This document shows, one piece after another, positions 6,709-31,408 of a stretch of DNA of 64,000 bases. The number at the start of each line of letters is the position of its first letter. Position 1 is the first letter of the stretch. The notes beneath the pieces are model-generated. The model ran no database searches and had not been told where the DNA came from. It saw only the letters and a list, made by a program, of their open reading frames with translations. The stretch covers positions 186,001 through 250,000 of IMG/VR virus record IMGVR_UViG_3300028920_000022; one strand, 5' to 3'. The position numbers and the translations under genes are program-made.

Positions 6709-7260
6709 TTGAAGGGAAAACAGAATAAGAATTTTATACCTGTAGGTTACAAGATTAGAGCAAGAGAAGTTCGTTGTATAGATAATAATAACAATAATTT
6801 AGGTGTTATTCCTATACAGGAAGCTGTGGAAATTGCGTCAAAAGCTGGGTTAGATTTAGTGCAAATATCTCCAGCTAAAAACAATGATGCTCCAGTATGT
6901 AAGATTATCGATTATGGAAAATATAAATATGACTTGTCAAAACGGCAAAAGGAAAATGCCAAGAAACAAAGAGAAACGTCGGTTAAAACTAAGGAAATTA
7001 AATTCCGCCCGACTACTGGAATTAATGATTTAAGAGTAAAGGCGTCACATGCGGAGAAATTTATTAATGATGGTTTTAAGGTGAAAGTAACTATTACCTT
7101 CAAGGGTCGTGAAATGGCTCATAAGGAAGTGGGTTATGAGACTTTGCAACGCTTTGTCGAGCTTGTGTCTAACATGGAGTTAATTAGCCAACCAAGTTTG
7201 CAGGGTAGAATGTTATCTGTAATGGGCTCAAAAAAGACCGACGAAGCTAAAGCATCATGA
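6709..7260 (+). CDS. infC: translation initiation factor IF-3 (non-AUG start)
   Basis: KIRAREVRCID, GLDLVQIS, PVCKIIDYGKYKY, KEIKFRPTTGINDL, KVKVTITFKGREMAH; both IF3 domains present. TTG start (or ATT at 6706) after AAGGAG. Confidence 0.95.
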   Translation: MKGKQNKNFIPVGYKIRAREVRCIDNNNNNLGVIPIQEAVEIASKAGLDLVQISPAKNNDAPVCKIIDYGKYKYDLSKRQKENAKKQRETSVKTKEIKFRPTTGINDLRVKASHAEKFINDGFKVKVTITFKGREMAHKEVGYETLQRFVELVSNMELISQPSLQGRMLSVMGSKKTDEAKAS

Positions 7261-7423
7261 TCAAAAAGAAAAGGCTCCCATGGGGCAGTAAGCCATGTTG
7301 TAGTCAGCCTACTCCGGAGTATCATTATTCTTGGAAGGACGAAACTGGGTTATGTGCCAAATGTGGCAAAAGACTTAGGTTTGGTAGCCGGTTATATTGG
7401 GAACGTATTCGAAAGCATAAAAC

Positions 7424-7939
7424 ATGATTTTAACTGATGAAGTTGCTCTACGGATAAAATGTGAAGACGTATTACCGGATGAGATTGGTTCTATACGTGA
7501 AGCCTTAGAGTCCGAATTACAACATTCTGCAGAGCTTGGCAGTCCGGGCGTGGGTTTAGCGGCACCACAGATCGGAATTGCTAAAAAGATGGCGATTGTA
7601 CGTCATGGAGATTTTAATATAGATCTAGTTAACTGTAAGGTGTTGAAAGGATTTGATAAAACAATTTTTGATGGCGAAGGGTGTTTATCTTTTCCTGGCA
7701 AATTTGTTAAAACTAATAGATATCAAGAGCTGCATGTTGTTGAAAACCTTATAGAACCTTATAATTTTATTGCGAGAGGTTTTTTAGCAGTAGTAACTGC
7801 TCATGAAATTGATCATTTATTTGGGGTTCTACTTCCAGATGTAGAAATAAAAGAAAAGATTAATAAAAAACGCAAGTTAAGACCTAATGATTTGTGTTTT
7901 TGTGGTTCCGGTAAAAAATATAAAAAATGTTGTATGTAG
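7424..7939 (+). CDS. def: peptide deformylase with C-terminal SEC-C motif
   Basis: GVGLAAPQIG, EGCLS, HEIDH motifs; tail RPNDLCFCGSGKKYKKCC. Confidence 0.93.
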   Translation: MILTDEVALRIKCEDVLPDEIGSIREALESELQHSAELGSPGVGLAAPQIGIAKKMAIVRHGDFNIDLVNCKVLKGFDKTIFDGEGCLSFPGKFVKTNRYQELHVVENLIEPYNFIARGFLAVVTAHEIDHLFGVLLPDVEIKEKINKKRKLRPNDLCFCGSGKKYKKCCM

Positions 7940-7964
7940 GCGTAGTAGGCATACTTACGCCTAT
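7936..7964 (+). other. intergenic stem-loop
   Basis: gtaggcgtag (7936-7945) pairs with ttacgcctat (7955-7964), including G-U pairs; no U-tract follows. Confidence 0.35.
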
Positions 7965-7978
7965 ACGTAGGTGTAACC

Positions 7979-8230
7979 ATGGAAGACAAAAAAGTACAGC
8001 AAAAAAGCGAAGAAATAAACCAAAATTATGACCAAGCACTGACTGAATTATTGTTTAGGGTGTCAGCGTTAGAACAGGTTCTTATTGAGCGCGGAATAGT
8101 TAGCCGTGAAGAGTTAGTCTTGGTAGTTAAAGAATCATTAAAGAAGATGGTTTCTCATCTAGCTTCTGATGGTAAGATTAGAAATGCTGATGTTATTTTA
8201 GAAAAAATTGACAAAAAGGTTTCTAACTAA
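7979..8230 (+). CDS. hypothetical protein
   Basis: ATG ORF, helical. Confidence 0.6.
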   Translation: MEDKKVQQKSEEINQNYDQALTELLFRVSALEQVLIERGIVSREELVLVVKESLKKMVSHLASDGKIRNADVILEKIDKKVSN

Positions 8231-8278
8231 AACTGTACTAATAAACCAATTTTAAATTAGACAGTATGGGTGTTAATT

Positions 8279-8593
8279 ATGCAGGCAATTACGAATGAAT
8301 CTGATTTTAATATTGACTCTGGTTTAGTAGCAGTAAAGTTTTGGGCGGCGTGGTGTGCCCCATGTAAAAGGATGGAGCCAGTTATTAGAAAAATGGAATC
8401 AGAATTCGAGAAAGTTAAGTTTATATCTATAGATATAGATCAGGTGCCAGTAATTGCGCAAAAATACCGAATAAGAGGGCTTCCTTCCTTATTATTATTC
8501 AAAAATGGGCATGAAGTTAACAGAATTAATGGATTAGTTTTGACGAGTCCGCTACGAAAGGCATTTAAAGATTTAGCAAAAGAAGAAGACTAG
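8279..8593 (+). CDS. trxA: thioredoxin
   Basis: VKFWAAWCAPCKRM active site; IRGLPSLLLFKNG cis-Pro loop. Confidence 0.93.
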   Translation: MQAITNESDFNIDSGLVAVKFWAAWCAPCKRMEPVIRKMESEFEKVKFISIDIDQVPVIAQKYRIRGLPSLLLFKNGHEVNRINGLVLTSPLRKAFKDLAKEED

Positions 8594-10951: not shown

Positions 10952-11161
10952 TTGTCAAAAGAGTTATATTCCTCTGAAGATATCTTGGAGCTTCTTTCTG
11001 AAGAGAAAGAATCGTATGGGGAGTATGTACGTTTATGCGAGAGATACCGGATACAACCGAACCCGATAGCGACGGCAGTCTCTCTGGCGAAGGTGGAGAT
11101 GTTGAAGAAGATTCTGGCTGGGAAACCGATGTATCGTCGAATTTTAGGAAACCAAAAGTAA
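10952..11161 (+). CDS. hypothetical protein (overlaps the next gene by 127 nt)
   Basis: TTG directly after the upstream TAA; plausible protein-like composition. Confidence 0.4.
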   Translation: MSKELYSSEDILELLSEEKESYGEYVRLCERYRIQPNPIATAVSLAKVEMLKKILAGKPMYRRILGNQK

Positions 11162-11709
11162 AACAACTCATAGACCTCGCAAATGAAAAACAGCCACTTA
11201 TAGACTTGCTTAATCTTTATCGTATTCATTTTCCAATTATAACATATAGCCCTAGCGGCTGGACACATAAAACGCAATGTCCGTTTCCTGACCACCGTGA
11301 TAGTAACCCATCGTTTAATTACAACTCAATAGAAGATAGGTTTAATTGTTTTGGGTGTGGTAGATCTGGTAGAGCAGTTCAGTTTAAAGCGGCAATGCAT
11401 AATCTTTCCGTGATGCAGGTTGCCGAAGATATAATTGAAAAGTTTGGATCGCTAGAAGATGCGTATTTAGAGATTAAAGAGCGAAAAGAAGACCTGTCAG
11501 ATGAGCTTTTGTTAGATTTTTCTTTGTACTTTAAAGCGTTTGTGGACAAATTTTATGGCAATGATAAAGCTTTATCGTTTGCCGAGTCCCTAGCTTGGAG
11601 TTTGGATTTGTATCTTCTGCAACACGCTTCCGATCCGTTTTTTAATTATACTAACTTGGAAGCTAGAGTGTCTCTTTTAAAAGAAAAACTGGACGAATAT
11701 TGTGAATAG
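11035..11709 (+). CDS. CHC2 zinc-finger protein (stand-alone DnaG-type zinc-binding domain)
   Basis: CPFPDHRDSNPSFNYNSIEDRFNCFGCGRSG...AMHNLSVMQVAE; no Toprim domain. Confidence 0.85.
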   Translation: MREIPDTTEPDSDGSLSGEGGDVEEDSGWETDVSSNFRKPKVKQLIDLANEKQPLIDLLNLYRIHFPIITYSPSGWTHKTQCPFPDHRDSNPSFNYNSIEDRFNCFGCGRSGRAVQFKAAMHNLSVMQVAEDIIEKFGSLEDAYLEIKERKEDLSDELLLDFSLYFKAFVDKFYGNDKALSFAESLAWSLDLYLLQHASDPFFNYTNLEARVSLLKEKLDEYCE

Positions 11710-12883
11710 AACGATAATTGTAGGAGACATTCACTTAGGTAAGGGTGTTTCTGTTGGTAAGCCAGGTATTGGTAACGCCATTAATAGTCGTGTTGCTGAT
11801 CAGTTGCGTTTGTTGAATTGGATATTTGATCAAGGGGTAGAGTATCAGATTGATAGGTTCATTATTACCGGAGATATATTTGAAGATGTAAAACCGGACC
11901 CACAACTTATTGTAATATTTGTAGATTGGTTGAAACGATGTGAGGACAGCGGAATAGAGTGCCACATTATTGCGGGAAATCATGATATTCGTCGTACTGG
12001 CGATATCTATATTTCAGTTTTGGATGTGGTTACTGCTGCTGGTTTAAGTAATACCACTATTTATAAAAACATTCACACTATTCACACAGATGGGGTATCG
12101 TTTACGTTATTACCTTTTAGGGATCGTTTATCGTTAGGGTGTGAAACAGTAAATGATGCCTTACAAAAGATTGGGGAAAAGTTGCCGTATGAATTGTTGG
12201 ACATTCCGTACAACAATATTCCTGTGTTAGTGGGGCATTTGGCGTTGGTAGATTCGTTTTATACTACCGAGTTGGGTGATGCCGCAAATGAGTTGATGTG
12301 TCCGTATAGTATGTTCGAAGGTTATGAATATGTGTGGATGGGACACGTACATAGTCCACAGATTATGCAGAAAAAACCTCATGTTGCGCATATTGGTAGT
12401 ATGGATTTATCAGATTTTGGTGAATGTAAACAAACCAAAATCCTTATTTTATTCGATCCTACACAGCCGCATAAGGAAATACCTGTTCCTAGCCGACCTT
12501 TGGTGAGAATAAAGAAGGATATTGGTTCTGGAACAGATCCTACACAGTTTTTATTGGATCTAATCAATAAATTAGATGTTAAAGATGCAATTATTAGTTT
12601 GGAGGTTAAACATTTAGACCCAGAAGGGGCAGAGATAGACCGAGATAAAGTGTTATCTGCTTTATTTGATGGTGGGGCTTATCATGTTTCTAGGTTTTCT
12701 GAGTCTAGAAATGTGGCGGTAGTTCCGGAAGACAAAAAAGAATTGCTTGAATACACCGTAGATCCAAAATCTGCCATCAAATTGTATGCTGACATGCTCG
12801 AATATGAAGACGAGCAGGAGAGATTATCATTTTTACAGTTTTGTGAAGAGTGTGTAGAGGAATACTACGCCAAGGAAAAGTAA
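11702..12883 (+). CDS. sbcD: SbcD/Mre11-like metallophosphoesterase nuclease
   Basis: GDIH, TGDIF, AGNHD, GHLA, MGHVH motifs; directly upstream of an SbcC-like ATPase. Confidence 0.9.
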   Translation: MNRTIIVGDIHLGKGVSVGKPGIGNAINSRVADQLRLLNWIFDQGVEYQIDRFIITGDIFEDVKPDPQLIVIFVDWLKRCEDSGIECHIIAGNHDIRRTGDIYISVLDVVTAAGLSNTTIYKNIHTIHTDGVSFTLLPFRDRLSLGCETVNDALQKIGEKLPYELLDIPYNNIPVLVGHLALVDSFYTTELGDAANELMCPYSMFEGYEYVWMGHVHSPQIMQKKPHVAHIGSMDLSDFGECKQTKILILFDPTQPHKEIPVPSRPLVRIKKDIGSGTDPTQFLLDLINKLDVKDAIISLEVKHLDPEGAEIDRDKVLSALFDGGAYHVSRFSESRNVAVVPEDKKELLEYTVDPKSAIKLYADMLEYEDEQERLSFLQFCEECVEEYYAKEK

Positions 12884-15027
12884 TGCAGCCCCTTAGATTA
12901 TATATAGAAAACTTTATGGGCAATAAAAAGAGTGATTTGGATTTCACTTCTTTTAAATCTTGCCTTGTTGTGGGGAAAAATAAACACGATCCTCGTGAAT
13001 CTAATGGCGTTGGTAAAAGTACCATCTTTAAAGCAATAGATTTTGTGCTCTTTGGTAAATATCCCTCTGACCATATTGAGGAAATTATATTTGAGGGAGC
13101 GGAGAAGTGTACAGTCTCATTGGAATTTGAAGCTGGTGGCAGTATTTATCGGGCAATTCGCATTCGTCATAGCAGAAGCGAACTAAAACTGGAGGAAAAG
13201 GCTGGGGACAAATGGATACCTAAGGGTCAGAGAACCAGTAAGCAAGCTACCATTGAGTTAAAAAAGCTCGTTCCTATTAGTTATGGGGCTTTTAATAGCT
13301 CTGTTTTATTTGCCCAGGGTGATTTGAGTGGTTTAGCAGAAGCCACGCCAGATAAAAGGAAGGCAATGTTAAAAGAGCCTCTCCAACTGGCTGTGTATAG
13401 TAAGTTCGAGGAGATTGCTAAAAAGAAAACCAAGAAGGTTGATGAGGAATTGCTCCTGGTAGAGAATCAGATCAAAGCCCTTGGTAATCCCCAAGAAACT
13501 ATTGACGAATATTCTAAACGAATAGAAAAAATAGTTCAAGAAGTTAAACAATGTAAAAATATTGTAGACATTATTCGTGAGAAAAACAATAAATATATTA
13601 AAGAACGTGATAAAATAAGTAAAAAACTTGAATCTGCTTCGGGCAGTTTGGGCAAATTAGAGGTTTTAAATACTAAAATCGCTAATCAACAAGCTCAAAT
13701 AAATAAATTAAACAGTAAAATAGAGAAAATAAACAGAGATATTGTAGAAAAGAAAGCAGATTTGAGGGGTTTGGAGTTATCAATTAAGTTATTGAATGAC
13801 GATTTGGAGAAAATCAACGTACCTTTGAAACCTGAAGAGGAAATAGAGCAGAATATAAAAGAGCTGAGGGAATCTGAAGAAAAAGGAATTGCATATCTAG
13901 CACAGACACAGGCACAAATAGACGCATGTGCACATACGTTGCCGGGCGAAGAGGTTTGTCCTCAGTGTCAACAGGGGATCACAGACGATTATCGCGAGAC
14001 TTTTATTAAAGAAAATAGCTCTAAAAAAGATGATTTAACCGCTTCTTATAAAAAATATTACCAAAAACTTACCAAAATACAAACGGATATATCTAATTTA
14101 AAAATAGAACTCAAAAATATTACCAAAACAAAAGCTAAAATAACTTCTTTGAAATCCGAAATACAATTAAAAGAATCTAAAATAGAAAATGTTAAAGAAA
14201 TAATTGAACAGTTTAATGCTTCTATAAAAGACGGCACGGAAGCTCTTGAATTAAGCATGAAGGAGTTGGCAGAAATACAAGAAGAACACAAATTATTATC
14301 TAAGGAACTAGAAAAAACTAACGTTACCCAGCTACAAAACAAAGAAAACGAATTAAATTCTACTATTTCTGAAACAGAAAAGGAATTAAATGAAGCATTA
14401 AACAATTCTTCTATGAAAAATAGGGAACTTGGTAATGCAGAGTCAACCATTGATAGGGCTAGAGAAGATTTACGTAAAATTGAAAATTATAGTAAACAAA
14501 AAATACAACTTGCTAAACAAATAAAAACACAGAAACGTGGAATATTTGCTTTTAGTCCCAAAGGAATTCCAACTTTAATTATAAATACTATACTTGACGA
14601 TTTACAATTTGAGGTGAATTCTTTATTGCAAGAGCTAAGACCAGAATTGGGAATGAAATTTATTATCTCTAAAGACGAAAAAGATACATTAGATATTATA
14701 TTTACTGTTGATGGAAAAAAACGAAGCTATAGTTTATTATCTGGTGGGCAAAAAATGTACATTGCTCTCAGTTTAAAAATGGGACTGTCACTTTTAATTC
14801 AAAAGAAACTAAATGTTAACATCAATTTCTTGGAATTAGACGAAGTAGATCAGTCTTTGGATAAAGCGGGAGTAGAAGCATTTGCGGACGTAATACGTAA
14901 ATGGCAGGACAAATTCAAGATTTTTGTTGTTACTCACAATGATAGTTTGAAAAATAAGTTTTCGCATGCCATTCTTGTCGAGAAGGGCAAGGATGGAGCC
15001 CATGCTAAAGTGGTTACTCAATGGTAA
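12883..15027 (+). CDS. sbcC: SbcC/Rad50-like SMC ATPase
   Basis: Walker A SNGVGKST, long coiled coils, central CPQC zinc hook, LSGGQ signature, LELDEVDQSLD Walker B/D-loop, VVTH. Confidence 0.93.
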   Translation: MQPLRLYIENFMGNKKSDLDFTSFKSCLVVGKNKHDPRESNGVGKSTIFKAIDFVLFGKYPSDHIEEIIFEGAEKCTVSLEFEAGGSIYRAIRIRHSRSELKLEEKAGDKWIPKGQRTSKQATIELKKLVPISYGAFNSSVLFAQGDLSGLAEATPDKRKAMLKEPLQLAVYSKFEEIAKKKTKKVDEELLLVENQIKALGNPQETIDEYSKRIEKIVQEVKQCKNIVDIIREKNNKYIKERDKISKKLESASGSLGKLEVLNTKIANQQAQINKLNSKIEKINRDIVEKKADLRGLELSIKLLNDDLEKINVPLKPEEEIEQNIKELRESEEKGIAYLAQTQAQIDACAHTLPGEEVCPQCQQGITDDYRETFIKENSSKKDDLTASYKKYYQKLTKIQTDISNLKIELKNITKTKAKITSLKSEIQLKESKIENVKEIIEQFNASIKDGTEALELSMKELAEIQEEHKLLSKELEKTNVTQLQNKENELNSTISETEKELNEALNNSSMKNRELGNAESTIDRAREDLRKIENYSKQKIQLAKQIKTQKRGIFAFSPKGIPTLIINTILDDLQFEVNSLLQELRPELGMKFIISKDEKDTLDIIFTVDGKKRSYSLLSGGQKMYIALSLKMGLSLLIQKKLNVNINFLELDEVDQSLDKAGVEAFADVIRKWQDKFKIFVVTHNDSLKNKFSHAILVEKGKDGAHAKVVTQW

Positions 15028-15218
15028 ACGCTAAACTAACTACCGCCTTTTGTGTTCGAAGTATGGTCTTCGATTCTAAAAATGGTGCAGACTTAGCCAA
15101 TGATTTGTTTTACAAGGGCACAGAAACAATTAGAAAAATAATTGCTGTAGAATATAACAATAGAATCTTTTGTACAAATCCCTTGATTTTAGTGGGAGAC
15201 GAAGATGGAACGCAGTAA
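15021..15218 (+). CDS. small hypothetical protein
   Basis: Fills the gap, overlapping both neighbours. Confidence 0.4.
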   Translation: MVNAKLTTAFCVRSMVFDSKNGADLANDLFYKGTETIRKIIAVEYNNRIFCTNPLILVGDEDGTQ

Positions 15219-16402: not shown

Positions 16403-16417
16403 TTAGCATATTGGCGT

Positions 16418-17710: not shown

Positions 17711-17712
17711 AC

Positions 17713-18513: not shown

Positions 18514-18519
18514 GAAAAA

Positions 18520-19746: not shown

Positions 19747-19749
19747 GAT

Positions 19750-20393: not shown

Positions 20394-20394
20394 A

Positions 20395-20526: not shown

Positions 20527-20541
20527 AAAGGAAGTAAGAAA

Positions 20542-21144: not shown

Positions 21145-21163
21145 TTTTAGCAATTAATCACAC

Positions 21164-23830: not shown

Positions 23831-23831
23831 T

Positions 23832-25031
23832 ATGGCAGGATATACTCTAGAACAATATTTAGAAAGAATACCTGAAAAATACAGGAACAAAGTTAAATTA
23901 ATAAATAAATTTCAAGGTAAGAGAACAAAAGTATTATTTACAAATGAAGTATGTGGGTGTGAAAGAGAGTATTTTTTGGGCGTGTTGGTGTTGCGTAAGA
24001 CGTTTGATGTATGTAAACATTGCAGATCACAATATGTAAGTAAAAAATATTTTTGTAAAAGGTGTGGCAAAGGGTTTATTACTGAGGAGTGGTTTCTACA
24101 ACATGATAAGAAATGTCTTGCTAAATTTAAAAATTTAATTGAGGGCGAAGATTATGTTACCTGTTACATTTGTGGTTTTCAGGCTTTAAGTCTAGGTTTG
24201 CATCTTCGTGTAAAACATGGGATTGATCCCGAGGAATATAAAAAAGATCATCAGATAATTTGTAGGAAATCTTCCGATATCTATGCTAAACAGAACTTAG
24301 AGAACTCAGAAGTTTTTCGTAGTTGGATAAAAGAAAGAGGACCTGAAGCCCAAGAATATTTAAATAAAAGGGGAAAAGAACTTAGTAAATCGATCATGTC
24401 TAACCCCGAGGAGCGAAAACGTCGTTCCAAAGCCATGGCTATACTGGATCGAACTGAGTATATGAGAAAAAAGGCATCAGAAACTGCTATTAAAACTTCG
24501 GCACGTAAGGACATACAGGAGAAGCGGGCTGCACAATTGAAACGATGGAGAGATAATAATCCTGAGATTTTTTATGAAAAATGTGTTAGTAAAATGCTAA
24601 ATACTTGGCATAGTAAGCCTGAAACTATACTATTTGAAGCGGTTTTAAATTACAATGATTATGTATTTAAGCGTAATCAAATAGTTAAATCTGAAATATT
24701 TCCAACTAAATCTAAACGAAAACAAATAGACATTGGAGACAAATCAAAAAGAGTATATATTGAATTTGATGGACAATTACATTTTAAAGAAACACAATTA
24801 AAACAGCTTGAACGTGTTCAATTAAAAGATGGCTTACTGGATAAACATATTATTAAACATGGTTGGACATTAATACGTGTTTCTTATGATCAATTTTCGT
24901 ATCGTAAACGAGATTTTGGGTTTAAAAAAGAATGTTTGGAAAAAGTATTCGAGATTTTAGATAATCCAACCCCGGGAGTACACACTATCGGGGAGGCGTA
25001 TGACGCTAAAAAAGAGACAAACAATGACTAA
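23832..25031 (+). mobile_element. free-standing Vsr/DUF559-like homing endonuclease with several Zn fingers, inserted between the dnaE halves
   Basis: CKHC, CKRC...HDKKC and CYIC...HLRVKH fingers, basic helical repeats, C-terminal SKPE...QIDI...IEFDGQLH...KD...GWTLIRV. Confidence 0.75.
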
Positions 25032-25134
25032 CATTAAATCTGTTCGTTCCATTGGTAAGGTTCAAACATATGATTTGGAGGTTGATCATCCGGATCATCA
25101 ATACTATTTGTCTAGTGGCATGCTCACCAGCAAC
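25024..25134 (+). mobile_element. split intein C-half (37 aa, ends Ser-Asn; +1 residue is Ser)
   Basis: MTNIKSVRSIGKVQTYDLEVDHPDHQYYLSSGMLTSN|S: block F TYDLEV and block G terminal Asn. Confidence 0.9.
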
Positions 25135-26322
25135 AGTCACGCCACTTTCTACTCTATGGTTGGATATCATACCGCTTATCTCAAAGCCCATTATCCGTTG
25201 GAATTTTTGGTTGCTATTTTAATGAATAAAGTCAATTCTAACTCACCATCCGCAAAAGATAGCATAGCCAAAATTAAAGAAGAAATAAGAGCACTAAATG
25301 TTAATATTCTACCGCCAAACATAAACACATCAGAATTAACCTATTCAATTATTGATGATAAAACTTTGCTTACAGGCTTTGATGCTCTTAAAGATATGGG
25401 TAAGAACGCTATCCCCGAGATCTTAGCTAAACGTCCGTTTGATAGCTTTGAAGATTTCTTGCTCAAAACTGATGGTCAGAAAGTTACCGCCCCTGCCATC
25501 AAAGCCCTCGCCGCTAGTGGTAGCCTGGATTCATTCGGTTTAACTAGAAAACAAATGTATTTGTATGCTTCTGATATAAAAAAGAAAATACAAGTTCATT
25601 TAAAGAATAAAAGAGAAGGTGAGTTTAAATATCCTTGGCCGGCAGATATAGAGGAATGGACAATTCCTGAATTATACGCCATGGAACGTGAATATTTGGG
25701 AGAAGGTATCAGCGGAGATAGATTCCAAGTATATGGCGGATTTTTTACCAAGAAAGCTCCCAGTTTCAAAAAACTTCCTAAACTGCACCCTCCTCCACCA
25801 GATGATATGACGGAAAAAGAACAACGTAAATATACCAAACATATTACAATGTTGCAGGCGGAAGTAAAGAGTTTCTTTGAATTTAAGGTAAAAAAAGAAG
25901 ATAGTAAGATATTTGGCGAAGTAATGGCTAAAGTTGCCCTTTGTGATCCTTGGGGCAACCAAATGACTATGACTTGTTTCCCCGAGGGTTGGTTACATTT
26001 ACAAAACCGTGTTTCGGAACTATTGAATAATAAACACAAATTCGATACAGGGCTTGGTTTGTATATAAATGGCGAACTAAATTGGTACGATGGTGATATA
26101 TCATTAATATTTGGGGACGTAGCTCGTTGTTGTCCTGCTCCTCAGATGCCATCCGATAGAGATAATAAGAAGGTTACTATTCGTAGGTCCAAGAAGAAAA
26201 ACCCCAAACAAGAAGAGCCAGAGAGAGACATTCTATTGGAAGAAATAGAAGATGATTTGGTAGATCGTGGTTATTCCGATTTGGATGATGAAGATGACGA
26301 TGTACAGGACGGTTTTGTTTAA
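25024..26322 (+). CDS. dnaE: DnaE C-terminal fragment preceded by the C-intein (alternative start 25000)
   Basis: After the intein: SHATFYSMVGYHTAYLKAHYPLEF, ILPPNINTS, HhH GFDALKDMG, EREYLGEGISG, OB-fold region. Confidence 0.92.
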   Translation: MTNIKSVRSIGKVQTYDLEVDHPDHQYYLSSGMLTSNSHATFYSMVGYHTAYLKAHYPLEFLVAILMNKVNSNSPSAKDSIAKIKEEIRALNVNILPPNINTSELTYSIIDDKTLLTGFDALKDMGKNAIPEILAKRPFDSFEDFLLKTDGQKVTAPAIKALAASGSLDSFGLTRKQMYLYASDIKKKIQVHLKNKREGEFKYPWPADIEEWTIPELYAMEREYLGEGISGDRFQVYGGFFTKKAPSFKKLPKLHPPPPDDMTEKEQRKYTKHITMLQAEVKSFFEFKVKKEDSKIFGEVMAKVALCDPWGNQMTMTCFPEGWLHLQNRVSELLNNKHKFDTGLGLYINGELNWYDGDISLIFGDVARCCPAPQMPSDRDNKKVTIRRSKKKNPKQEEPERDILLEEIEDDLVDRGYSDLDDEDDDVQDGFV

Positions 26323-26334
26323 AAAGGTTTTATA

Positions 26335-26991
26335 ATGCGATGTGTTAAATGTCAAACAGAAATACCTCCCGAATGGAAAGCGGCAATTAAAAGCAATATT
26401 TGCCCGGCTTGCGGTGGGGAATTAATGAACGATTCCATGCAGGAACTTTTGCGGGAATTAAGTAAAGCACTTGAAGCTATGCCAAACGATCCCGAAGGAA
26501 TTGCCGGATGGTTATTATCTAATTATGAGCTTAGAAAAATAGGTACCGGAGAACCAGTTAATGAGTTTTATGGATCTCAGCGAAAAGTACCACAAGGTAA
26601 AGATTTAGTAGTTAATGAGAATAGAATTCAGCAGTTTCTTAAACAAGCAGGAGTAAAACCCAAGAAAACGCAGGCAGATTATGCAAGTTTAGCTCAACAA
26701 ATTCGAGACGGTGGCACTGATTATGGTGAGGCTTTTTCAGATCCGTCGCCTGAACAGCCAGAAGAGTTTGTAGAGGAAGCTCGCGATCCCGAATATACAC
26801 AACAAGTATTGTCTGCTATGACCACAGGCGCGCCCACAAAAACCAGCATGGGAGCAGCACAGCCATCTTCTGATTTAGATAATGATATGTCAGGTTTGCA
26901 TCCTGCTTTGCGACAAGACCGTATACACCGTCTTCGCCAACAATTAGAAGTCGGTTCCGGCGGCAAAGCGGGTGTTATTCGTAGAAAGTAA
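26335..26991 (+). CDS. Zn-ribbon hypothetical protein
   Basis: MRCVKC...CPACG at the N-terminus. Confidence 0.65.
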   Translation: MRCVKCQTEIPPEWKAAIKSNICPACGGELMNDSMQELLRELSKALEAMPNDPEGIAGWLLSNYELRKIGTGEPVNEFYGSQRKVPQGKDLVVNENRIQQFLKQAGVKPKKTQADYASLAQQIRDGGTDYGEAFSDPSPEQPEEFVEEARDPEYTQQVLSAMTTGAPTKTSMGAAQPSSDLDNDMSGLHPALRQDRIHRLRQQLEVGSGGKAGVIRRK

Positions 26992-26995
26992 GAAT

Positions 26996-27331
26996 ATGGC
27001 ATTGCGTATTATTGCCAACCGGCGAATAGAATTAACCGACGATGAGTGGAAATATTATCAGGAAATTTGTAAGCATTATACTGGAGGAAAAGAATTATTT
27101 AATGATTTATTTGAAAGCGACGAAAGTGGTTTAATAAGATTTTTGCGACCTCCTGTGGGTAAATTTACCTGGGAGATAGTTTTATTTCTACAGAATATTA
27201 TGGTGCACCAATATGTTAGGAAGATGTATCGTGAGCACCAAGAGGTATTAAAAGAGCTTAAGGAAGAATTAGATAAAATTCGTTCTAAGGTCGAGCCTAA
27301 GCAGAAAAAGCAGTCAAAAAAGAATGACTGA
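26996..27331 (+). CDS. hypothetical protein
   Basis: ATG at 26996 (MALRII). Confidence 0.6.
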   Translation: MALRIIANRRIELTDDEWKYYQEICKHYTGGKELFNDLFESDESGLIRFLRPPVGKFTWEIVLFLQNIMVHQYVRKMYREHQEVLKELKEELDKIRSKVEPKQKKQSKKND

Positions 27332-27782
27332 AGTAGAGTGGACTGAAGAGGCAGCTCCTGAAGAAACCCGTGAGGAACGGGTGGTTATTCTTATTTCTTC
27401 TATTGCTGAGGAAATTACCATTGCTCACAAAAAGAAGTATGATCAGGAAACTGCAGAACAAACCGCAGCGTTATGTTTGGATGCCCAACGTGAGTTGGCT
27501 GAATTTTTATCAGAAGCTGAGTTTTTATCAAAAGAAAGCAAAGCTGACGTCGAGAGATTAGAATCTGAGCAATACTTTTATTACAAAGGAAAAGCTGTAG
27601 GAAAGACTTCTGATGCAGCGTTAAAACAGGAAGTAGCCCGAGATAAAGAAGTTGTAAAGGCGAAGAAGAAACAGTTCCGGGCGGAAGCCGATTATAATAA
27701 ATGGCGAAATTTGTTCGGATTTTTGAAAGATGCCCATTATTACTTCAGAGGTGTGGCTAAAGGTAAAGATGAATGGAGCTGA
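27324..27782 (+). CDS. helical protein, possibly a UvsY-like recombination mediator
   Basis: All-helical composition and position directly upstream of the RecA-like gene; the assignment is inference. Confidence 0.35.
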   Translation: MTEVEWTEEAAPEETREERVVILISSIAEEITIAHKKKYDQETAEQTAALCLDAQRELAEFLSEAEFLSKESKADVERLESEQYFYYKGKAVGKTSDAALKQEVARDKEVVKAKKKQFRAEADYNKWRNLFGFLKDAHYYFRGVAKGKDEWS

Positions 27783-28822
27783 TTATGGGAAGACCTCCTA
27801 AACCAAAAAATAAAATAGATATAAATGCGTTATTAGAAAAAGTACAAGCATCATACGGAAAAGATAAAGGTAGAGCAGCCGAGGTTTCCACCGGTAGCTC
27901 GCTGGTTAGACCAAACAGAGACGACCAGTTTGTATGTTGGAAAGATTCTCCGTGGGAATCACTTACTCAAATTAGAGGATTGCCGTTTGGTCGTATCTGC
28001 CAAATCGCAGGCAGACCAGATAGCGGTAAAAGCACCCACGCTATGCAGTTTATGAAGAATGCCCAGGATCAGGGCTGCGTAGTGATATTGTGGGATGCCG
28101 AAAACAAATTTAGCGCCACCAGATTTGATAAGTATTTTGGTGGACGCTCTGATGATCTCCTTTTAGTGAGATCAAAATTAATATTGGAAGGTGGTGATAG
28201 AGTAGAACGTTTCATACATGAAATAAAAAATATGGATCCTGACGCCAAGATTTTGGTTGTTTGGGATTCAGTTGGCGGCACACTTGCGAAAAATGAAGCG
28301 GTGGATGTTTCAGAAGATAAAAAAGGTAAAAAGAACAAGTATGAAGGCAGCATGGCTGATAATAAGCAGCTAGCTGCCGCCGCCAAAGAAAATGGTACGG
28401 TGATGCGTGGATTGATTCGTTTAATGGAGAAATATAAAGATCAGGATAATGAATCAATTTCAGTATTACTAATTAACCAAACATATTCCAACATTGGTTC
28501 GCATGGTCAAAAAGAATCCGGCGGACAAAAGGTGGAATTCTTTTCTTCCATAATAGTTCAATTAACTCGCAAGGGTGATTTGAACTTTACTCGTGATGGT
28601 GTAAAACGAAGAAAAGGCATTGTGACAAGGGCAAAAGTTTCTAAGAATCATTTATTTGATGGCGAAGATACGATTGCGGAACTGGAATTGGCTATCACGG
28701 CTGGCGGAATCAATCTTCTTAGCGATTATAAAGTTTTGGAAAAGAAAACCAAGACTGGTTGGGAAGATAATGATGAGGCTGATGTAGAAGTCGAGGAGCC
28801 CATTTCGGATGAGGTTAATTAG
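27773..28822 (+). CDS. RecA/UvsX-like recombinase
   Basis: GLPFGRICQIAGRPDSGKST Walker A, WDAE, VWDSVG Walker B, LINQ, SGGQKVEFFSS. Confidence 0.9.
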   Translation: MELIMGRPPKPKNKIDINALLEKVQASYGKDKGRAAEVSTGSSLVRPNRDDQFVCWKDSPWESLTQIRGLPFGRICQIAGRPDSGKSTHAMQFMKNAQDQGCVVILWDAENKFSATRFDKYFGGRSDDLLLVRSKLILEGGDRVERFIHEIKNMDPDAKILVVWDSVGGTLAKNEAVDVSEDKKGKKNKYEGSMADNKQLAAAAKENGTVMRGLIRLMEKYKDQDNESISVLLINQTYSNIGSHGQKESGGQKVEFFSSIIVQLTRKGDLNFTRDGVKRRKGIVTRAKVSKNHLFDGEDTIAELELAITAGGINLLSDYKVLEKKTKTGWEDNDEADVEVEEPISDEVN

Positions 28823-28824
28823 TC

Positions 28825-29172
28825 ATGTCAGGAACACATAAAGTAGGTGAGGTTGCTATACAAAAAGCTAACGCTTCTGCTTTAGCGGAAAATAGGCTAG
28901 CAAATAAATCTACTAATAAATTCCTATATATAGCGAGGATCAAACACCTCTCAGATGAGTCCAAAATACAAATATATGTGCTGCTAAAACAGACAGAATG
29001 GGTATATGGACTTGATTTTGTGGGGTATGAGATCACAGTACAGAAGCTAACAAAGTTAACGAGTTATTTAGAAGCTTTAGAATATGCCAAGAATAGTACA
29101 GTTAAAGTAGTTAACAAGCGAATACCTTGGGCACGAATTCTCGAAGTAGAAAATATGTCGTATAACAAATAA
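28825..29172 (+). CDS. hypothetical protein
   Basis: ATG ORF. Confidence 0.6.
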   Translation: MSGTHKVGEVAIQKANASALAENRLANKSTNKFLYIARIKHLSDESKIQIYVLLKQTEWVYGLDFVGYEITVQKLTKLTSYLEALEYAKNSTVKVVNKRIPWARILEVENMSYNK

Positions 29173-29188
29173 GCAATGAGGTAACACA

Positions 29189-29866
29189 ATGAGTAATAAT
29201 AAATATGGAATGGTAAGTTGGGACGAGGTTGAAACACAGACAACTTCTCCAAATGCATCACGTAGGGATCTGTTCCTGCGTTTGTCTGATGGCTCTAATA
29301 TTGTTAGAGTTCTCACGAAACCACATGAGTATCTCATGTATCGCTATAAGTCCGATCCTAGCGATCCGGGTTATGGAGAGAGGGTTTTGTCCAGTATCTA
29401 TCACGGGTCTGATCCTTTGATGGAAAAGGGGCTAAAGCCGAAGAAGCGTTGGCTCGTTGGAGTTATTGATCGATCAACCCAGAGTTATAAAATCCTAGAT
29501 ATAGGTCCTGCTATCTTTAAAGGGATTCAGACTTTGGTCCGGGATGAGGATTGGGGAGATCCAACTCAATTCGATATTAACATCAAGGTTGATAAGAATG
29601 GTGGACCAACCGGGTATTACACTGTAACCCCCAAGAAACAGAAGCCATTGACGCCAGAGGATCTTGAGATTAAACAAATGGTAGATCTCGAAGAGCTGAA
29701 GCGTAAGTGTACTCCTCCTACTCCCGAACAGGTTGCTGAACGTGTGGCTGCTATCGATGCTAAGAGCAAAGCTCGTAAAAACGGCGGCTCCAATCCAGTA
29801 ACGGTAGAGGATGAGGATGACGATGACGATACTGATTTTCCGGCAGTGGAAGGGTCGGAATCTTAA
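29189..29866 (+). CDS. single-stranded DNA-binding protein (gp32-like)
   Basis: FLRLSDGSNIVRVL, YKILDIGPAIFKGI, FDINIKV...YTVTP, acidic DEDDDDDTDF tail; next to the recombinase. Confidence 0.7.
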   Translation: MSNNKYGMVSWDEVETQTTSPNASRRDLFLRLSDGSNIVRVLTKPHEYLMYRYKSDPSDPGYGERVLSSIYHGSDPLMEKGLKPKKRWLVGVIDRSTQSYKILDIGPAIFKGIQTLVRDEDWGDPTQFDINIKVDKNGGPTGYYTVTPKKQKPLTPEDLEIKQMVDLEELKRKCTPPTPEQVAERVAAIDAKSKARKNGGSNPVTVEDEDDDDDTDFPAVEGSES

Positions 29867-29891
29867 ACAATAATCGCTAATACAATTAATT

Positions 29892-29930
29892 GAAAGGGTG
29901 GCTCTGTAAAGAGTCACCCTTTCTTTTTTT
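29892..29930 (+). terminator. rho-independent terminator
   Basis: 14-bp stem gaaagggtggctct / agagtcaccctttc (one G-U pair), GTAA loop, then 7 T. Confidence 0.85.
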
Positions 29931-29949
29931 GTTCGTTATATCTTATGGT

Positions 29950-30471
29950 ATGAGTTTAATTATGGGTCTGGACGTTAGTTCCACTACTGTTGGTCTTTCT
30001 ATCATCAAAGATGAGCCTCTCACTTTAGTTCATACAGAATTCTTTAAACCACCAAAAAAGGTTCATATATTTAAGCAATTGGAACAAACTAAATTATATG
30101 TTCTCAAAAAACTAAAACAATATAAACCAGACCAAATTGTTATTGAAGATATTATTGAATATATACAAGGTGGAAGCGGATCTAAAACTACTATTAAGTT
30201 GGCGATATTTAATAGAACAATTGGTTTGGCAATTTTTGAGGAGTTGGGAGAGCCACCAATTTTATTAAATGTAAATACTGCCAGGAAGCTAATAAAACCT
30301 GAAGGATATTCTGGTCGATTGACCAAGGAAGATGTGCCTCAAGCCTTAGAGGTTTTGTTTGATCAGCCTTTCCCTTTCTTATACAATAAAAAGGGGAACA
30401 TTAAAAAAGAATCTTACGATATGGCTGATTCTGTCGCTATTGCCGTTGCCCACGTGTTAAATCATGAATAG
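29950..30471 (+). CDS. RuvC-like Holliday junction resolvase
   Basis: IMGLDVSSTTVG, IVIED, DMADSVAIA acidic catalytic motifs. Confidence 0.8.
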   Translation: MSLIMGLDVSSTTVGLSIIKDEPLTLVHTEFFKPPKKVHIFKQLEQTKLYVLKKLKQYKPDQIVIEDIIEYIQGGSGSKTTIKLAIFNRTIGLAIFEELGEPPILLNVNTARKLIKPEGYSGRLTKEDVPQALEVLFDQPFPFLYNKKGNIKKESYDMADSVAIAVAHVLNHE

Positions 30472-31408
30472 AAATGAAGCTTACAATATTTTGGGTCTGG
30501 ATTCGTCTGCTACCGAAGAGGATGTTAATAAAGCCTTTCGGAAGTTAGCTGCACAATATCATCCCGACCGTAACAAAGATGAAAATGCCGAGGCGGAATT
30601 TAAGAAAATAAATGAAGCCGCTCAAATATTAAAAAAACCAGAGGAAGAATTTAATCCGTTTTTTAATGTACCCAGCTGGGCAAATTCAGTTAATTTTCAT
30701 GTTAATAGAAGACGGAGAAACTCTCCCCCACCAACCGTGTATGTGAACTTCTCTTTTGAGGAATCAGTGCTGGGATGTAAAAAGGAAATTGAATTTACTC
30801 GCGATGCCAGATGTAATGCTTGCCAAGGAAGAGGAGATATTCTAACCAATGATAAATGTCCAGCTTGTAATGGTAAAGGCAATACTTCCCAACACCAAAA
30901 TACCAATTCGGGACATTTTAAGTTCATTATGACCTGCCCACAATGCTCTGGCTCTGGTAAAAAAGCTGATCCCTGTTCCACCTGTTCAGGTACCGGTGCT
31001 ACACCAGAAACCGTTAAACATAAAATTAATATCCCAGGTGGTATACATAATCAGGAAACTATTCGTTTGCCACAAGCTGGTCATTATAATTCTGGATTTG
31101 TTTCTGATGCTTTTATTATCGCTAACGTGGAACCAGATAAAGATATGTCGCTTTCTCCCAATGGTAGAGATGTCTTATCTAATATTGAACTTTCCCTCTT
31201 GGAAGCCCTCAAAGGTACTAAGAAAAAAGTGCGTACCGTTAAAGGCGAATTAACCCTTAATATTCGTCCGGGCACCAAAAATGAAAACATCATCAAAGCT
31301 TCAGGCTATGGCTCTAGAGGTCTTGGTGATCATCTATTTACTATTAAAGTAAATTATCCAGAAGATATAGATAAACTTGTAGACTTTTTAGAAAATGAGG
31401 AAAAATAA
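30464..31408 (+). CDS. dnaJ: DnaJ (type I) co-chaperone
   Basis: J domain with YHPD, four CxxCxGxG repeats, C-terminal substrate-binding domain. Confidence 0.93.
   Translation: MNRNEAYNILGLDSSATEEDVNKAFRKLAAQYHPDRNKDENAEAEFKKINEAAQILKKPEEEFNPFFNVPSWANSVNFHVNRRRRNSPPPTVYVNFSFEESVLGCKKEIEFTRDARCNACQGRGDILTNDKCPACNGKGNTSQHQNTNSGHFKFIMTCPQCSGSGKKADPCSTCSGTGATPETVKHKINIPGGIHNQETIRLPQAGHYNSGFVSDAFIIANVEPDKDMSLSPNGRDVLSNIELSLLEALKGTKKKVRTVKGELTLNIRPGTKNENIIKASGYGSRGLGDHLFTIKVNYPEDIDKLVDFLENEEK

What the first reader, a model, noticed from the sequence alone, without database searches (positions are those of the whole stretch)
6709..31408. Phage-encoded toolkit for the ribosome and nascent chains: IF-3, PDF, bL12, trigger factor, DnaJ, thioredoxin
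Seen: full-length infC (6709), def (7424), trxA (8279), rplL (15205), tig (18520) and dnaJ (30464), each isolated among phage genes and without its usual bacterial neighbours (rpmI-rplT, rplJ-rpoB, clpP). Known: PDF and trigger factor both act at the exit tunnel, bL12 recruits translational GTPases, and IF-3 controls start selection; individual phage copies of IF-3, PDF and bL12 have been reported. Inference: together they cover initiation, elongation-factor recruitment, N-terminal processing and co-translational folding, a coordinated remodelling of host ribosomes.
Basis: partly seen in the sequence, partly recalled or inferred. Interest (0 to 1): 0.7.

Follow-up and report, generated by a model that had tools for sequence, protein, structure and literature searches.

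The report
Huge-phage toolkit for nascent proteins
A 459-kb marine-sediment phage and its clade of roughly 340-480-kb relatives carry their own ribosome exit-tunnel factors (a deformylase with a SecA-like zinc tail, methionine aminopeptidase, trigger factor) plus DnaJ, bS21 and often IF3; translation genes in huge phages were already known, but I found no report of trigger factor or methionine aminopeptidase as conserved phage genes.

Summary
All six genes are at the stated coordinates, full length, with their catalytic or signature motifs, in a phage genome (terminase and portal in the window, CheckV 100%).

The interpretation needs re-weighting. In 29 related records that encode trigger factor (10 at least 90% complete), the counts were:
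- DnaJ: 29/29
- PDF: 28/29
- bS21: 28/29
- thioredoxin: 26/29
- type I methionine aminopeptidase: 10/10 of the near-complete genomes
- IF3: 19/29, and 5/10 of the near-complete genomes
- full-length bL12: 2/29
- Hsp70: 0/29

The phage trigger factors form one fully supported clade. They are at most 28% identical to any bacterial trigger factor found, which points to one old capture inherited vertically, in fixed synteny inside the replication module.

The deformylase carries a conserved SecA-type zinc motif in place of the usual ribosome-binding helix. A thioredoxin gene follows it in nearly every genome.

Best reading: the phage supplies its own line for processing and folding nascent chains on host ribosomes, and DnaJ recruits host DnaK. 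Ribosome binding, timing and benefit are inferred, not shown. It is a new variant of the known theme of huge phages encoding translation genes.

The parts
6709..7260 (+). infC-like translation initiation factor IF3 (183 aa). The start is TTG, 8 nt after AAGGAG.
   Evidence: TIGR00168 172 bits (cut-off 60), with IF3_N + IF3_C. Six relatives keep a TTG start after GGAG. Present in 19 of 29 related records.
7424..7939 (+). Peptide deformylase fused to a C-terminal SecA-type zinc (SEC-C/MBD) motif, aa 155-171, nt 7886-7936.
   Evidence: PF01327 81.6 bits and PF02810 35 bits. Motifs GVGLAAPQ, EGCLS, HEIDH and CFCGSGKKYKKCC. The tail is kept in 30 of 33 syntenic loci and 119 of 120 nearest homologues. 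PDF is in 28 of 29 records.
7979..8230 (+). Small ORF (83 aa) between PDF and thioredoxin; function unknown.
   Evidence: No Pfam match. No tblastn match in related loci at E<=1e-5.
8270..8593 (+). Thioredoxin (active site WCAPC). The likely start is the ATG at 8279.
   Evidence: PF00085 79.8 bits. A thioredoxin lies 0.4-1 kb downstream of PDF in nearly all related genomes; 26 of 29 records and 10 of 10 near-complete ones have one.
15205..15567 (+). Ribosomal protein bL12 (120 aa), with both the N-terminal dimerisation/L10-binding domain and the C-terminal factor-binding domain.
   Evidence: TIGR00855 132 bits (cut-off 84.4). A full-length copy occurs in only 2 of 29 related records and in the closest relative L002. 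Nearest homologues are 55-61% identical and from mixed phyla.
18520..19746 (+). Trigger factor (408 aa): N domain with a GFRPGKA loop, an FKBP-like domain and C-terminal arms.
   Evidence: TIGR00115 187.2 bits (cut-off 180.2). AF2 pLDDT 88.8; Foldseek best matches 3gty, 1w26 and 2vrh at E about 1e-21. Monophyletic with 36 other huge-phage TFs. Synteny is kept in 75 of 80 loci.
30464..31408 (+). DnaJ-like co-chaperone (314 aa): J domain with HPD, a short linker without Gly/Phe richness, four CxxCxGxG motifs, a substrate-binding C domain, and almost no dimerisation tail.
   Evidence: PF00226, PF00684 and PF01556. Motifs. Alignment to 6jzb. In 29 of 29 related records. No Hsp70 in any of them.
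11035..32532 (+). Surrounding replication and recombination module in which bL12, TF and DnaJ are embedded. It comprises a DnaG Zn-ribbon, Mre11/Rad50-like proteins, dNMP kinase, a PD-(D/E)XK nuclease, a split PolIII alpha, a RecA-like protein, RuvC and a Toprim primase.
   Evidence: Pfam matches. The order is conserved in related viral contigs.
43839..47522 (+). Large terminase (43839-45656) and portal (45672-47522). These hallmark genes show the contig is a tailed phage.
   Evidence: phrog_675 at 1.7e-61 and phrog_16240 at 1.6e-56.

Best explanation
The phage carries its own set of factors for starting translation and for processing and folding newly made chains on host ribosomes. The set is vertically inherited.

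The core, kept across the whole clade, has five parts:
- bS21.
- A catalytically intact peptide deformylase. Its usual ribosome-binding helix is replaced by a SecA-type zinc domain.
- A thioredoxin that always follows the deformylase gene.
- A type I methionine aminopeptidase.
- A full three-domain trigger factor, and a DnaJ that must use host DnaK because no phage Hsp70 exists.

IF1 and IF3 (this phage and about half of its relatives) and bL12 (this phage and very few others) are add-ons.

Proposed working:
1. After infection, the phage copies keep up or raise the capacity to deformylate, trim and shield nascent phage proteins.
2. This happens while host gene expression declines and very large amounts of virion and replication proteins are made.
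3. PDF is tethered near the exit tunnel by its zinc domain.
4. TF docks through its conserved GFRxGK loop.
5. DnaJ passes clients to host DnaK.
6. bS21, IF1, IF3 and bL12 exchange into host ribosomes.

Shown: presence of the genes, intact motifs and folds, clade-wide conservation, fixed synteny, a single origin for TF, and absence of phage Hsp70 and of translational GTPases.

Inferred: ribosome binding, expression timing, any preference for phage proteins, and the fitness benefit.
For: - Family and motif matches for all the genes.
- TF model and fold matches to solved trigger factors, including the ribosome-bound 2vrh.
- Conservation in 29 TF-bearing records: DnaJ 29/29, PDF 28/29, bS21 28/29, Trx 26/29. 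MetAP is in 10 of 10 near-complete genomes and Hsp70 in 0 of 29.
- TF is present in 4 of 5 further large records chosen by terminase alone. The exception is incomplete, and its terminase lies 22 kb from the contig end.
- The order nuclease-TF-PolIII alpha is kept in 75 of 80 loci.
- The phage TFs form one clade (SH-aLRT 100, stem length 0.92). They are 23-28% identical to the best bacterial TFs from a scan of 185,579 species genomes.
- GFRxGK is kept in 106 of 118 TF homologues, and G42 and F43 are invariant.
- PDF motifs are kept in 100-120 of its 120 nearest homologues, and the SEC-C tail in 119 of 120.
- The SecA zinc domain alone co-sediments with 70S ribosomes (PMC6620043).
- The C-terminal helix that it replaces is the ribosome anchor of E. 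coli PDF, and other viral PDFs lack it (PMC5591237).
- bS21 and bL12 of other phages enter E. coli ribosomes (PMC6375957).
Against: - No experiment or transcript data are available. No RNA run holds the sequence.
- The genes are scattered over about 36 kb, and MetAP lies about 150 kb away. They are not one operon.
- They sit among replication genes, so the context does not point to translation.
- The TF signature lacks its final proline (GFRPGKAT).
- PDF, Trx and DnaJ score below NCBIfam equivalog cut-offs, so their functions may have shifted.
- The second-residue composition of predicted phage proteins shows no special need for methionine excision: 42% small residues against a 38% background.
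- The record set was first picked by TF presence. The independent terminase-based check covers only five records.
Confidence: 0.55

Rival explanations
1. The chaperones work off the ribosome, for the phage's own replication and virion assembly. In this reading DnaJ, with host DnaK, remodels replisome or initiator complexes, as host DnaJ/DnaK do for phages lambda and P1 (my own knowledge). TF acts as an assembly chaperone for capsid or tail proteins. PDF, MetAP, bS21 and IF3 would then be separate auxiliary genes.
For: - DnaJ lies between RuvC and the Toprim primase.
- TF lies between a PD-(D/E)XK nuclease and PolIII alpha, and this position is kept in 75 of 80 loci.
- The best fold match, 3gty, is a study of trigger factor's folding and assembly activities.
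- Iyer 2021 predicts that jumbo-phage DnaJ proteins recruit host HSP70 for folding and assembly.
Against: - The ribosome-docking loop GFRxGK is under strong conservation in the phage TF clade.
- TF co-occurs with the two other exit-tunnel enzymes in every near-complete genome.
- Early or middle gene blocks of large phages mix functions, so neighbourhood is weak evidence.
Confidence: 0.25
2. The genes are an uncoordinated collection of captured host genes. Each is kept, or drifts, for its own reason, as with many auxiliary genes, and there is no common mechanism.
For: - bL12 is in only 2 of 29 records.
- IF3 is patchy, sits at two different positions, and is reduced to a 92-aa remnant in one genome.
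- The genes are not contiguous.
- Huge phages of other clades hold different mixes of translation genes (PMC7162821).
Against: - TF had a single old origin.
- TF, PDF, DnaJ, bS21, Trx and MetAP are retained almost universally across TF divergence down to about 30% identity, with catalytic motifs intact.
- The PDF-Trx adjacency and the PDF zinc-tail fusion are both conserved.
Confidence: 0.15
3. The contig is not a phage. It would instead be a bacterial chromosome piece, a megaplasmid or a chimeric assembly, and the genes would be ordinary cellular copies.
For: - Seven related records are labelled 'provirus' by IMG/VR.
- IMG/VR lists this record as linear.
Against: - Terminase, portal and a protease-like gene lie in the window.
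- CheckV rates the record 100% complete.
- The ends of the contig share a terminal repeat.
- The genome has no Hsp70, EF-Tu family, S1, Cpn10 or Cpn60.
- No bacterial genome has a TF more than 28% identical.
- The same gene order recurs on 75 viral contigs, many of them 300-480 kb.
Confidence: 0.03

Closest known systems
Translation-gene repertoires of huge phages (Al-Shayeb et al. 2020, PMC7162821)
   Same: Phages over 200 kb that encode IF1, IF3, bS21, L7/L12, PDF and tRNAs. They are interpreted as intercepting and sustaining host translation.
   Different: That paper's text does not mention trigger factor, methionine aminopeptidase, chaperones or thioredoxin. Here the exit-tunnel trio plus DnaJ is the clade-wide conserved part, while IF3 and bL12 are the variable part.
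Viral peptide deformylases (cyanophage S-SSM7, Vibrio phage Vp16; PMC3660681, PMC5591237)
   Same: Phage-borne PDFs with the three catalytic motifs intact and without the type 1B C-terminal ribosome-binding helix.
   Different: Those PDFs simply end after motif III. This clade adds a short linker and a SecA-type CxCx8C(C/H) zinc domain, and always has a thioredoxin gene downstream.
Bacterial trigger factor (E. coli Tig; PDB 1w26, 2vrh)
   Same: The same three-domain fold over the full length, with the GFRxGK ribosome loop, an FKBP domain and C-terminal arms.
   Different: At most 28% identical to any bacterial TF found. It forms a separate long-stemmed clade, lacks the final proline of the signature, and is not next to clpP-clpX.
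DnaJ-domain co-chaperones of jumbo phages (Iyer et al. 2021, PMC7824862)
   Same: Phage DnaJ without a phage Hsp70, predicted to recruit host HSP70. Full-length DnaJ also occurs in GenBank huge phages of 595-642 kb and in Prevotella phages.
   Different: Described there as sporadic. Here it is in 29 of 29 related records at a fixed position, with a shortened linker and tail.
Metal-binding domain of SecA (Jamshad et al. 2019, PMC6620043)
   Same: The same motif and near-identical sequence (xPNDxCxCGSGKKYKKC). The SecA domain binds SecB and, on its own, 70S ribosomes.
   Different: Here it is attached to a deformylase instead of a translocation ATPase. Its partner is unknown.
Virus-encoded ribosomal proteins bS21 and bL12 (Mizuno et al. 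2019, PMC6375957)
   Same: Exchangeable ribosomal proteins carried by phages. In that study they were detected in E. coli ribosome fractions.
   Different: The bL12 domains of cultivated phages in that study were mostly in small genomes, often inside larger proteins. Here it is a free-standing full-length bL12 in a 459-kb phage.
Phage-encoded chaperonin parts (T4 gp31; GroEL-like protein of phage EL). From my own knowledge, not checked here.
   Same: A phage brings its own folding helper for its own proteins.
   Different: Those are chaperonin-type, post-translational helpers. This set acts, by homology, at or near the ribosome exit and through Hsp70. The genome has no Cpn10 or Cpn60.

Membership tests
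Trigger factor (Tig) | Full-length match to the equivalog model above its curated cut-off | tested here: met
   TIGR00115 187.2 bits against 180.2, covering aa 15-401.
Trigger factor (Tig) | Three-domain architecture: N-terminal ribosome-binding domain, FKBP-type PPIase, C-terminal arms | tested here: met
   PF05697, PF00254 (23.4 against 21.1) and PF05698. AF2 pLDDT 88.8. Foldseek finds solved TFs at E 1e-21, the N domain in 1oms (TM 0.83) and FKBP domains.
Trigger factor (Tig) | Signature loop GFRxGxxP that contacts uL23 | tested here: inconclusive
   The sequence is GFRPGKAT. GFRxGK is kept (106 of 118 homologues; G and F invariant), but the final P is T here and P in only 26 of 118.
Trigger factor (Tig) | Binds the ribosome at uL23 | not testable with these tools
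   Needs co-sedimentation or cryo-EM. The single modelling attempt gave no verdict and is listed only under Tried and rejected.
Trigger factor (Tig) | Usual bacterial neighbourhood tig-clpP-clpX | tested here: not met
   The neighbours are a PD-(D/E)XK nuclease and PolIII alpha.
Peptide deformylase | Three catalytic motifs: GxGxAAxQ, EGCxS, HExxH | tested here: met
   GVGLAAPQ, EGCLS and HEIDH. PF01327 81.6 against 22.8.
Peptide deformylase | Equivalog-level score (TIGR00079) | tested here: not met
   76 bits against a cut-off of 103.95. It is a divergent PDF.
Peptide deformylase, type 1B | C-terminal alpha-3 helix that anchors to the ribosome | tested here: not met
   After motif III come a 10-15-residue linker and the SEC-C motif, with no helix-length segment.
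SEC-C / SecA metal-binding domain | CxCx8C(H/C) with flanking basic residues | tested here: met
   CFCGSGKKYKKCC. PF02810 35 bits against 20.4. Motif definition from PMC6620043.
IF3 (infC) | N and C domains with an equivalog score | tested here: met
   TIGR00168 172.2 against 60; PF05198 and PF00707.
IF3 (infC) | Unusual AUU-type start codon and the infC-rpmI-rplT operon. The AUU autoregulation is from my own knowledge. | tested here: not met
   The start is TTG after GGAG, and six relatives share it. The in-frame ATT before it is not conserved. The neighbours are an unknown ORF and PDF.
Ribosomal protein bL12 | N-terminal dimerisation/L10-binding domain plus C-terminal factor-binding domain, with an equivalog score | tested here: met
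   TIGR00855 132.1 against 84.4; PF16320 and PF00542.
Type I DnaJ (Hsp40) | J domain with HPD, four CxxCxGxG motifs and C-terminal substrate domains | tested here: met
   HPD at residue 33. Zinc motifs at 117, 132, 158 and 171. PF00226, PF00684 and PF01556.
Type I DnaJ (Hsp40) | Gly/Phe-rich linker, dimerisation tail, and an equivalog score | tested here: not met
   The linker is about 32 aa and not Gly-rich, against about 63 aa in 6jzb. The tail is nearly absent. TIGR02349 224.8 against 377.2.
Type I DnaJ (Hsp40) | A cognate Hsp70 encoded with it | tested here: not met
   No HSP70 in this genome or in 28 relatives. It must use the host's.
Thioredoxin | Thioredoxin fold with a CxxC active site | tested here: met
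   PF00085 79.8 bits; WCAPC instead of WCGPC. It is below the TIGR01068 cut-off, 86.4 against 96.8.
Type I methionine aminopeptidase (outside the window, G000 356708-357553) | Equivalog score | tested here: met
   TIGR00500 180.8 against 171.35. Present in 10 of 10 near-complete relatives.
Tailed phage (Caudoviricetes) | Large terminase and portal | tested here: met
   phrog_675 at 1.7e-61 and phrog_16240 at 1.6e-56. CheckV 100%.

The most novel reading that the evidence does not exclude
The deformylase with the SecA-type zinc domain, the methionine aminopeptidase and the trigger factor together take over the exit port of host ribosomes as a phage-specific station. The zinc tail would compete with SecA (and SecB) for the same sites, and phage TF would displace host TF, SRP or SecA. 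Host protein export and folding would then be down-ranked while phage chains are processed first. The conserved thioredoxin would keep the deformylase and zinc-motif cysteines reduced. If so, this would be the first viral system that takes over the ribosomal exit site rather than initiation.
Probability: 0.12. Interest if true: 0.85.

Novelty: new variant of a known kind. Interest (0 to 1): 0.62.

Why it matters
Work on how phages take over translation has centred on initiation (bS21, S1, IF) and on tRNAs. This clade shows that the other end of the ribosome is also held under long-term selection in a virus. The genes for removing the formyl group and the first methionine, shielding the nascent chain and handing it to Hsp70 have persisted as the clade's trigger factors diverged to about 30% identity.

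It offers testable material:
- A trigger factor lineage that has evolved apart from cells.
- A natural fusion of deformylase with the SecA zinc domain. This bears on the open question of what that domain binds besides SecB.
- A conserved deformylase-thioredoxin pair.

It also gives a marker set (TF, PDF with zinc tail, DnaJ) for recognising this uncultivated clade in metagenomes.

Tried and rejected
- **AUU start for infC.** I considered that the phage gene keeps the bacterial AUU start, because an in-frame ATT sits at 6706. Rejected: six relatives share a TTG after GGAG, and the preceding codon varies.
- **Modelling TF on uL23.** Complex prediction with TF residues 1-150 and E. coli uL23 gave no verdict (score 0.00). 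It is evidence neither way.
- **Near-identical DNA in GenBank phages.** None found. By protein search, TF and MetAP have only hits of 33% identity or less, in small or probably contaminated records. The terminase is about 25% identical to those of Bacillus siphophages. The clade is therefore not represented among deposited phages. Records very near the window may have been hidden by the tool.
- **Single-protein scan of viral contigs with DnaJ.** It found nothing. The whole-record family search was needed instead.
- **Host or donor from bL12.** The nearest homologues are 55-61% identical and spread over Alphaproteobacteria, Desulfobacterota, Bdellovibrionota and others. No donor can be named.
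- **Host or donor from TF.** The best bacterial hits are 23-28% identical and scattered over at least nine phyla.
- **Promoter and terminator scan of 6000-20500.** Promoter-like sites were fewer than in shuffled sequence, and terminator-like sites were not clearly enriched.
- **Second-residue usage as a sign of special need for methionine excision.** 42% small residues against a 38% background, from crude start calls. Not informative.
- **Small ORFs near the genes.** Ten small ORFs in the block have no Pfam match.
- **Stop-codon recoding, prompted by a tRNA with anticodon UUA.** TAA ends 235 of 613 long ORFs and coding density is 89% under code 11, so no other code is indicated.
- **RNA evidence.** No RNA run holds the sequence.

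Full report
**1. What is there**

The window is bases 186001-250000 of a single 458,729-bp contig. The contig has 39.5% G+C and 16 tRNA genes, and its first 100+ bases recur 136 bases before its end. The tools identify it as an IMG/VR virus record that CheckV rates 100% complete. Almost all genes in the window are on the + strand.

- IF3, 6709-7260
- peptide deformylase, 7424-7939
- thioredoxin, 8270-8593
- bL12, 15205-15567
- trigger factor, 18520-19746
- DnaJ, 30464-31408

IF3, bL12 and TF score above NCBIfam equivalog cut-offs. PDF, Trx and DnaJ pass Pfam cut-offs but stay below the equivalog cut-offs, so they are divergent members.

Key motifs are intact:
- PDF: GVGLAAPQ, EGCLS, HEIDH
- Trx: WCAPC
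- DnaJ: HPD and four CxxCxGxG
- TF: GFRPGKA

The TF model is confident (pLDDT 88.8). Its best structural matches are solved trigger factors over the full length, including the ribosome-bound E. coli protein.

**2. Is it a phage?**

Yes.
- The window holds a large terminase (43839-45656), a portal (45672-47522) and a large ORF with a prohead-protease-like stretch.
- The genes between the six are a phage-style replication and recombination module. It has a DnaG split into two ORFs 20 kb apart, Mre11/Rad50-like proteins, dNMP kinase, a PD-(D/E)XK nuclease, PolIII alpha split in two, a RecA-like protein and RuvC.
- The genome lacks Hsp70, any EF-Tu-family GTPase, S1, Cpn10 and Cpn60.
- No deposited phage is close.
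- The source is a marine sediment metagenome, and partial matches occur in marsh and marine sediment runs.

**3.

Outside the window the same genome encodes three more relevant genes:
- bS21 with extensions (G000 180474-180827; TIGR00030 44 against 29)
- a type I methionine aminopeptidase (G000 356708-357553; TIGR00500 180.8 against 171.35)
- IF1 (G000 408117-408308)

All three enzymes or chaperones that work at the bacterial exit tunnel (PDF, MetAP, TF) are therefore present. A B12-type ribonucleotide reductase lies at about 352-355 kb. It is a possible alternative client for thioredoxin.

**4. Conservation across relatives**

TF has a large family of unnamed metagenomic homologues, many on contigs of 170-500 kb. 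A profile scan of IMG/VR returned 80 loci, many from records of 300-480 kb.

Within 10 kb of TF, the order CHB_HEX-like ORF, PD-(D/E)XK nuclease, TF, two small ORFs, PolIII alpha is kept in 75 of 80 loci.

Whole-record family searches covered 29 TF-bearing records, 10 of them at least 90% complete:

| Gene | All 29 records | 10 near-complete |
|---|---|---|
| DnaJ | 29/29 | 10/10 |
| PDF | 28/29 | 10/10 |
| bS21 | 28/29 | 10/10 |
| Trx | 26/29 | 10/10 |
| MetAP | 16/29 | 10/10 |
| IF3 | 19/29 | 5/10 |
| full-length bL12 | 2/29 | 1/10 |
| Hsp70 | 0/29 | 0/10 |

That set was chosen by TF, so I also built a terminase profile. At least 475 IMG/VR contigs hold a relative. Of five large records that were not in the TF list, four have TF above the equivalog cut-off. 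The fifth is 78% complete, and its terminase lies 22 kb from the contig end, which is about where TF would fall off the contig.

TF therefore behaves as a core gene of this terminase-defined clade.

**5. Origin**

A scan of one genome for each of 185,579 prokaryote species found no bacterial TF more than 28% identical. Phage TFs are 30-75% identical to the window's.

In a maximum-likelihood tree of 45 viral and 40 bacterial TFs, 37 huge-phage TFs form one clade with SH-aLRT 100 on a stem of 0.92 substitutions per site. The clade is separate from bacteria of at least nine phyla. Eight other viral contigs with weak matches fall among the bacteria.

This fits one old capture followed by vertical descent. 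It does not fit repeated capture, and it names no donor. The bacterial rows were found with patterns derived from the phage alignment. That biases them towards the most phage-like bacterial sequences and so makes the separation conservative.

bL12 is different. Its nearest relatives are 55-61% identical ordinary bacterial proteins of mixed phyla, and it is rare in the clade, so it is a later addition.

IF3 sits directly upstream of PDF in one subclade (this phage, G001, G002, G014, G019, G020, G022 and G026, with a 92-aa remnant in G004). In the other subclade it lies about 21 kb away. That means either a move or two captures.

**6. The deformylase is unusual**

After motif III the protein has a short linker and then xRPNDxCxCGSGKKYKKCC, a SEC-C motif (PF02810).
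- The tail is kept in 30 of 33 syntenic loci and in 119 of the 120 nearest homologues.
- None of those 120 carries a bacterial name, and many lie on 200-435-kb contigs.
- In E. coli the C-terminal helix of PDF is the ribosome anchor, and previously studied viral PDFs simply lack it (PMC5591237).
- The same zinc motif at the end of SecA binds SecB and, on its own, co-sediments with 70S ribosomes (PMC6620043).

The most economical inference is that the phage PDF has swapped one ribosome tether for another. Binding to SecB is the alternative.

A thioredoxin gene lies 0.4-1 kb downstream of PDF in nearly every genome. Candidates are the oxidation-sensitive PDF, the zinc-motif cysteines and the reductase.

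**7. Mechanism proposed**

By homology:
- PDF and MetAP process the N-terminus of nascent chains.
- TF docks by its conserved loop and shields the chains.
- DnaJ delivers clients to host DnaK, because there is no phage Hsp70. It has HPD, zinc fingers and a substrate domain, but a shortened linker and almost no dimerisation tail.
- bS21, IF1, IF3 and bL12 can exchange into host ribosomes. bL12 would recruit host GTPases, because the phage has none.

I think the likeliest purpose is to keep maturation and folding capacity high for the phage's own very large protein output while host expression fails. This is inference. There is no binding, expression or phenotype evidence.

**8. Rivals**

- The position of TF and DnaJ inside the replication module, together with the known off-ribosome assembly activity of TF, allows a role in replication or virion assembly (0.25).
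- An uncoordinated collection of captured genes fits bL12 and IF3. It does not fit the conserved core (0.15).
- A non-phage origin is essentially excluded (0.03).

**9. What is known**

Already reported:
- IF1, IF3, S21, L7/L12, PDF, elongation and release factors in huge phages (PMC7162821)
- bS21 and bL12 in viruses (PMC6375957)
- sporadic DnaJ domains, and IF3, in jumbo phages (PMC7824862)
- full-length DnaJ at 28-30% identity in GenBank huge phages of 595-642 kb and in Prevotella phages

I found no paper in the searchable library that links trigger factor with jumbo, huge or mega phages. I found no paper describing a phage methionine aminopeptidase, and none of the papers I read mentions a deformylase with a SEC-C tail. 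That library does not cover all journals, so this is absence of evidence only.

**10. Verdict**

The finding is best described as a new variant of a known kind. It is a clade-wide, vertically inherited set of exit-tunnel and chaperone genes (PDF with a zinc tail, Trx, MetAP, TF, DnaJ) with bS21. IF1/IF3 and bL12 are variable extras. Interest 0.62.

Noticed in passing
G000 451588-451662 (- strand), outside the window: ARAGORN calls a suppressor-type tRNA with anticodon UUA. Yet TAA ends 235 of 613 long ORFs and coding density is 89% under code 11, so recoding is not indicated.
   Followed up: partly
window 21164-26322: PolIII alpha is split. PHP, NTPase and finger domains are in 21164-23830 and the HHH_6 part is in 25000-26322. 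An ORF with a weak ROS/MucR match (23832-25031) lies between them. The two halves are conserved in 74-75 of 80 related loci.
   Followed up: partly
window 11035-11709 and 31726-32532: The DnaG-type primase is split into a zinc-ribbon ORF and a Toprim/catalytic ORF about 20 kb apart.
   Followed up: no
window 58786-59547; proteins P0361, P0363, P0365 and others: There is a LAGLIDADG homing endonuclease gene near the structural genes. Many terminase relatives are about 770-1330 aa and match in two stretches, which suggests intein-sized insertions.
   Followed up: no
window 51813-53036: An ORF with a dual-specificity/tyrosine phosphatase domain (PTP-SAK, 2.5e-08) lies between the portal region and the protease-like ORF.
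   Followed up: no
window 53873-57280: G+C rises to 0.45 over this 1135-aa ORF, against about 0.38 elsewhere. Only residues 87-231 match anything, a prohead-protease-like PHROG.
   Followed up: no
G004:C1:151240-151479: A 92-aa ORF with a sub-threshold IF3_C match sits directly upstream of that phage's PDF, where full IF3 sits in this phage. It is probably a decayed infC.
   Followed up: no
G001:C1:70-111 kb: The 435-kb relative has no full bL12, but it has five weak bL12-C-domain-like matches inside other ORFs in this stretch and a sixth, sub-threshold one near 367.7 kb.
   Followed up: no
L073-L081 (IMG/VR contigs of 12-105 kb): These viral contigs carry trigger factors that fall among bacterial sequences in the tree (Actinomycetota-like, Alphaproteobacteria-like). 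They are separate captures, proviruses or host contamination.
   Followed up: partly
protein P0052 (15.7-kb contig): A TF 43% identical to the window's is named as coming from an Anaerovoracaceae MAG. No bacterial genome representative has a TF above 28% identity, so this contig is probably a phage fragment binned into a MAG.
   Followed up: no
G009, G010, G012, G013, G015, G016, G018, G024 and others: Many relatives have a second, more canonical thioredoxin (E about 1e-27 to 1e-31) some 40-50 kb from the PDF-linked copy. This phage has only the PDF-linked one.
   Followed up: no
G000 ends (1-136 and 458594-458729): The first 100+ bases recur exactly 136 bases from the end, but the last part of the overlap has 10 mismatches. 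IMG/VR lists the record as linear.
   Followed up: partly
L083:1279-1938 (G000 351278-351937): A sigma-70-family (ECF-like) factor gene lies just upstream of the B12-type ribonucleotide reductase, whose C-terminal part appears as a separate ORF.
   Followed up: no
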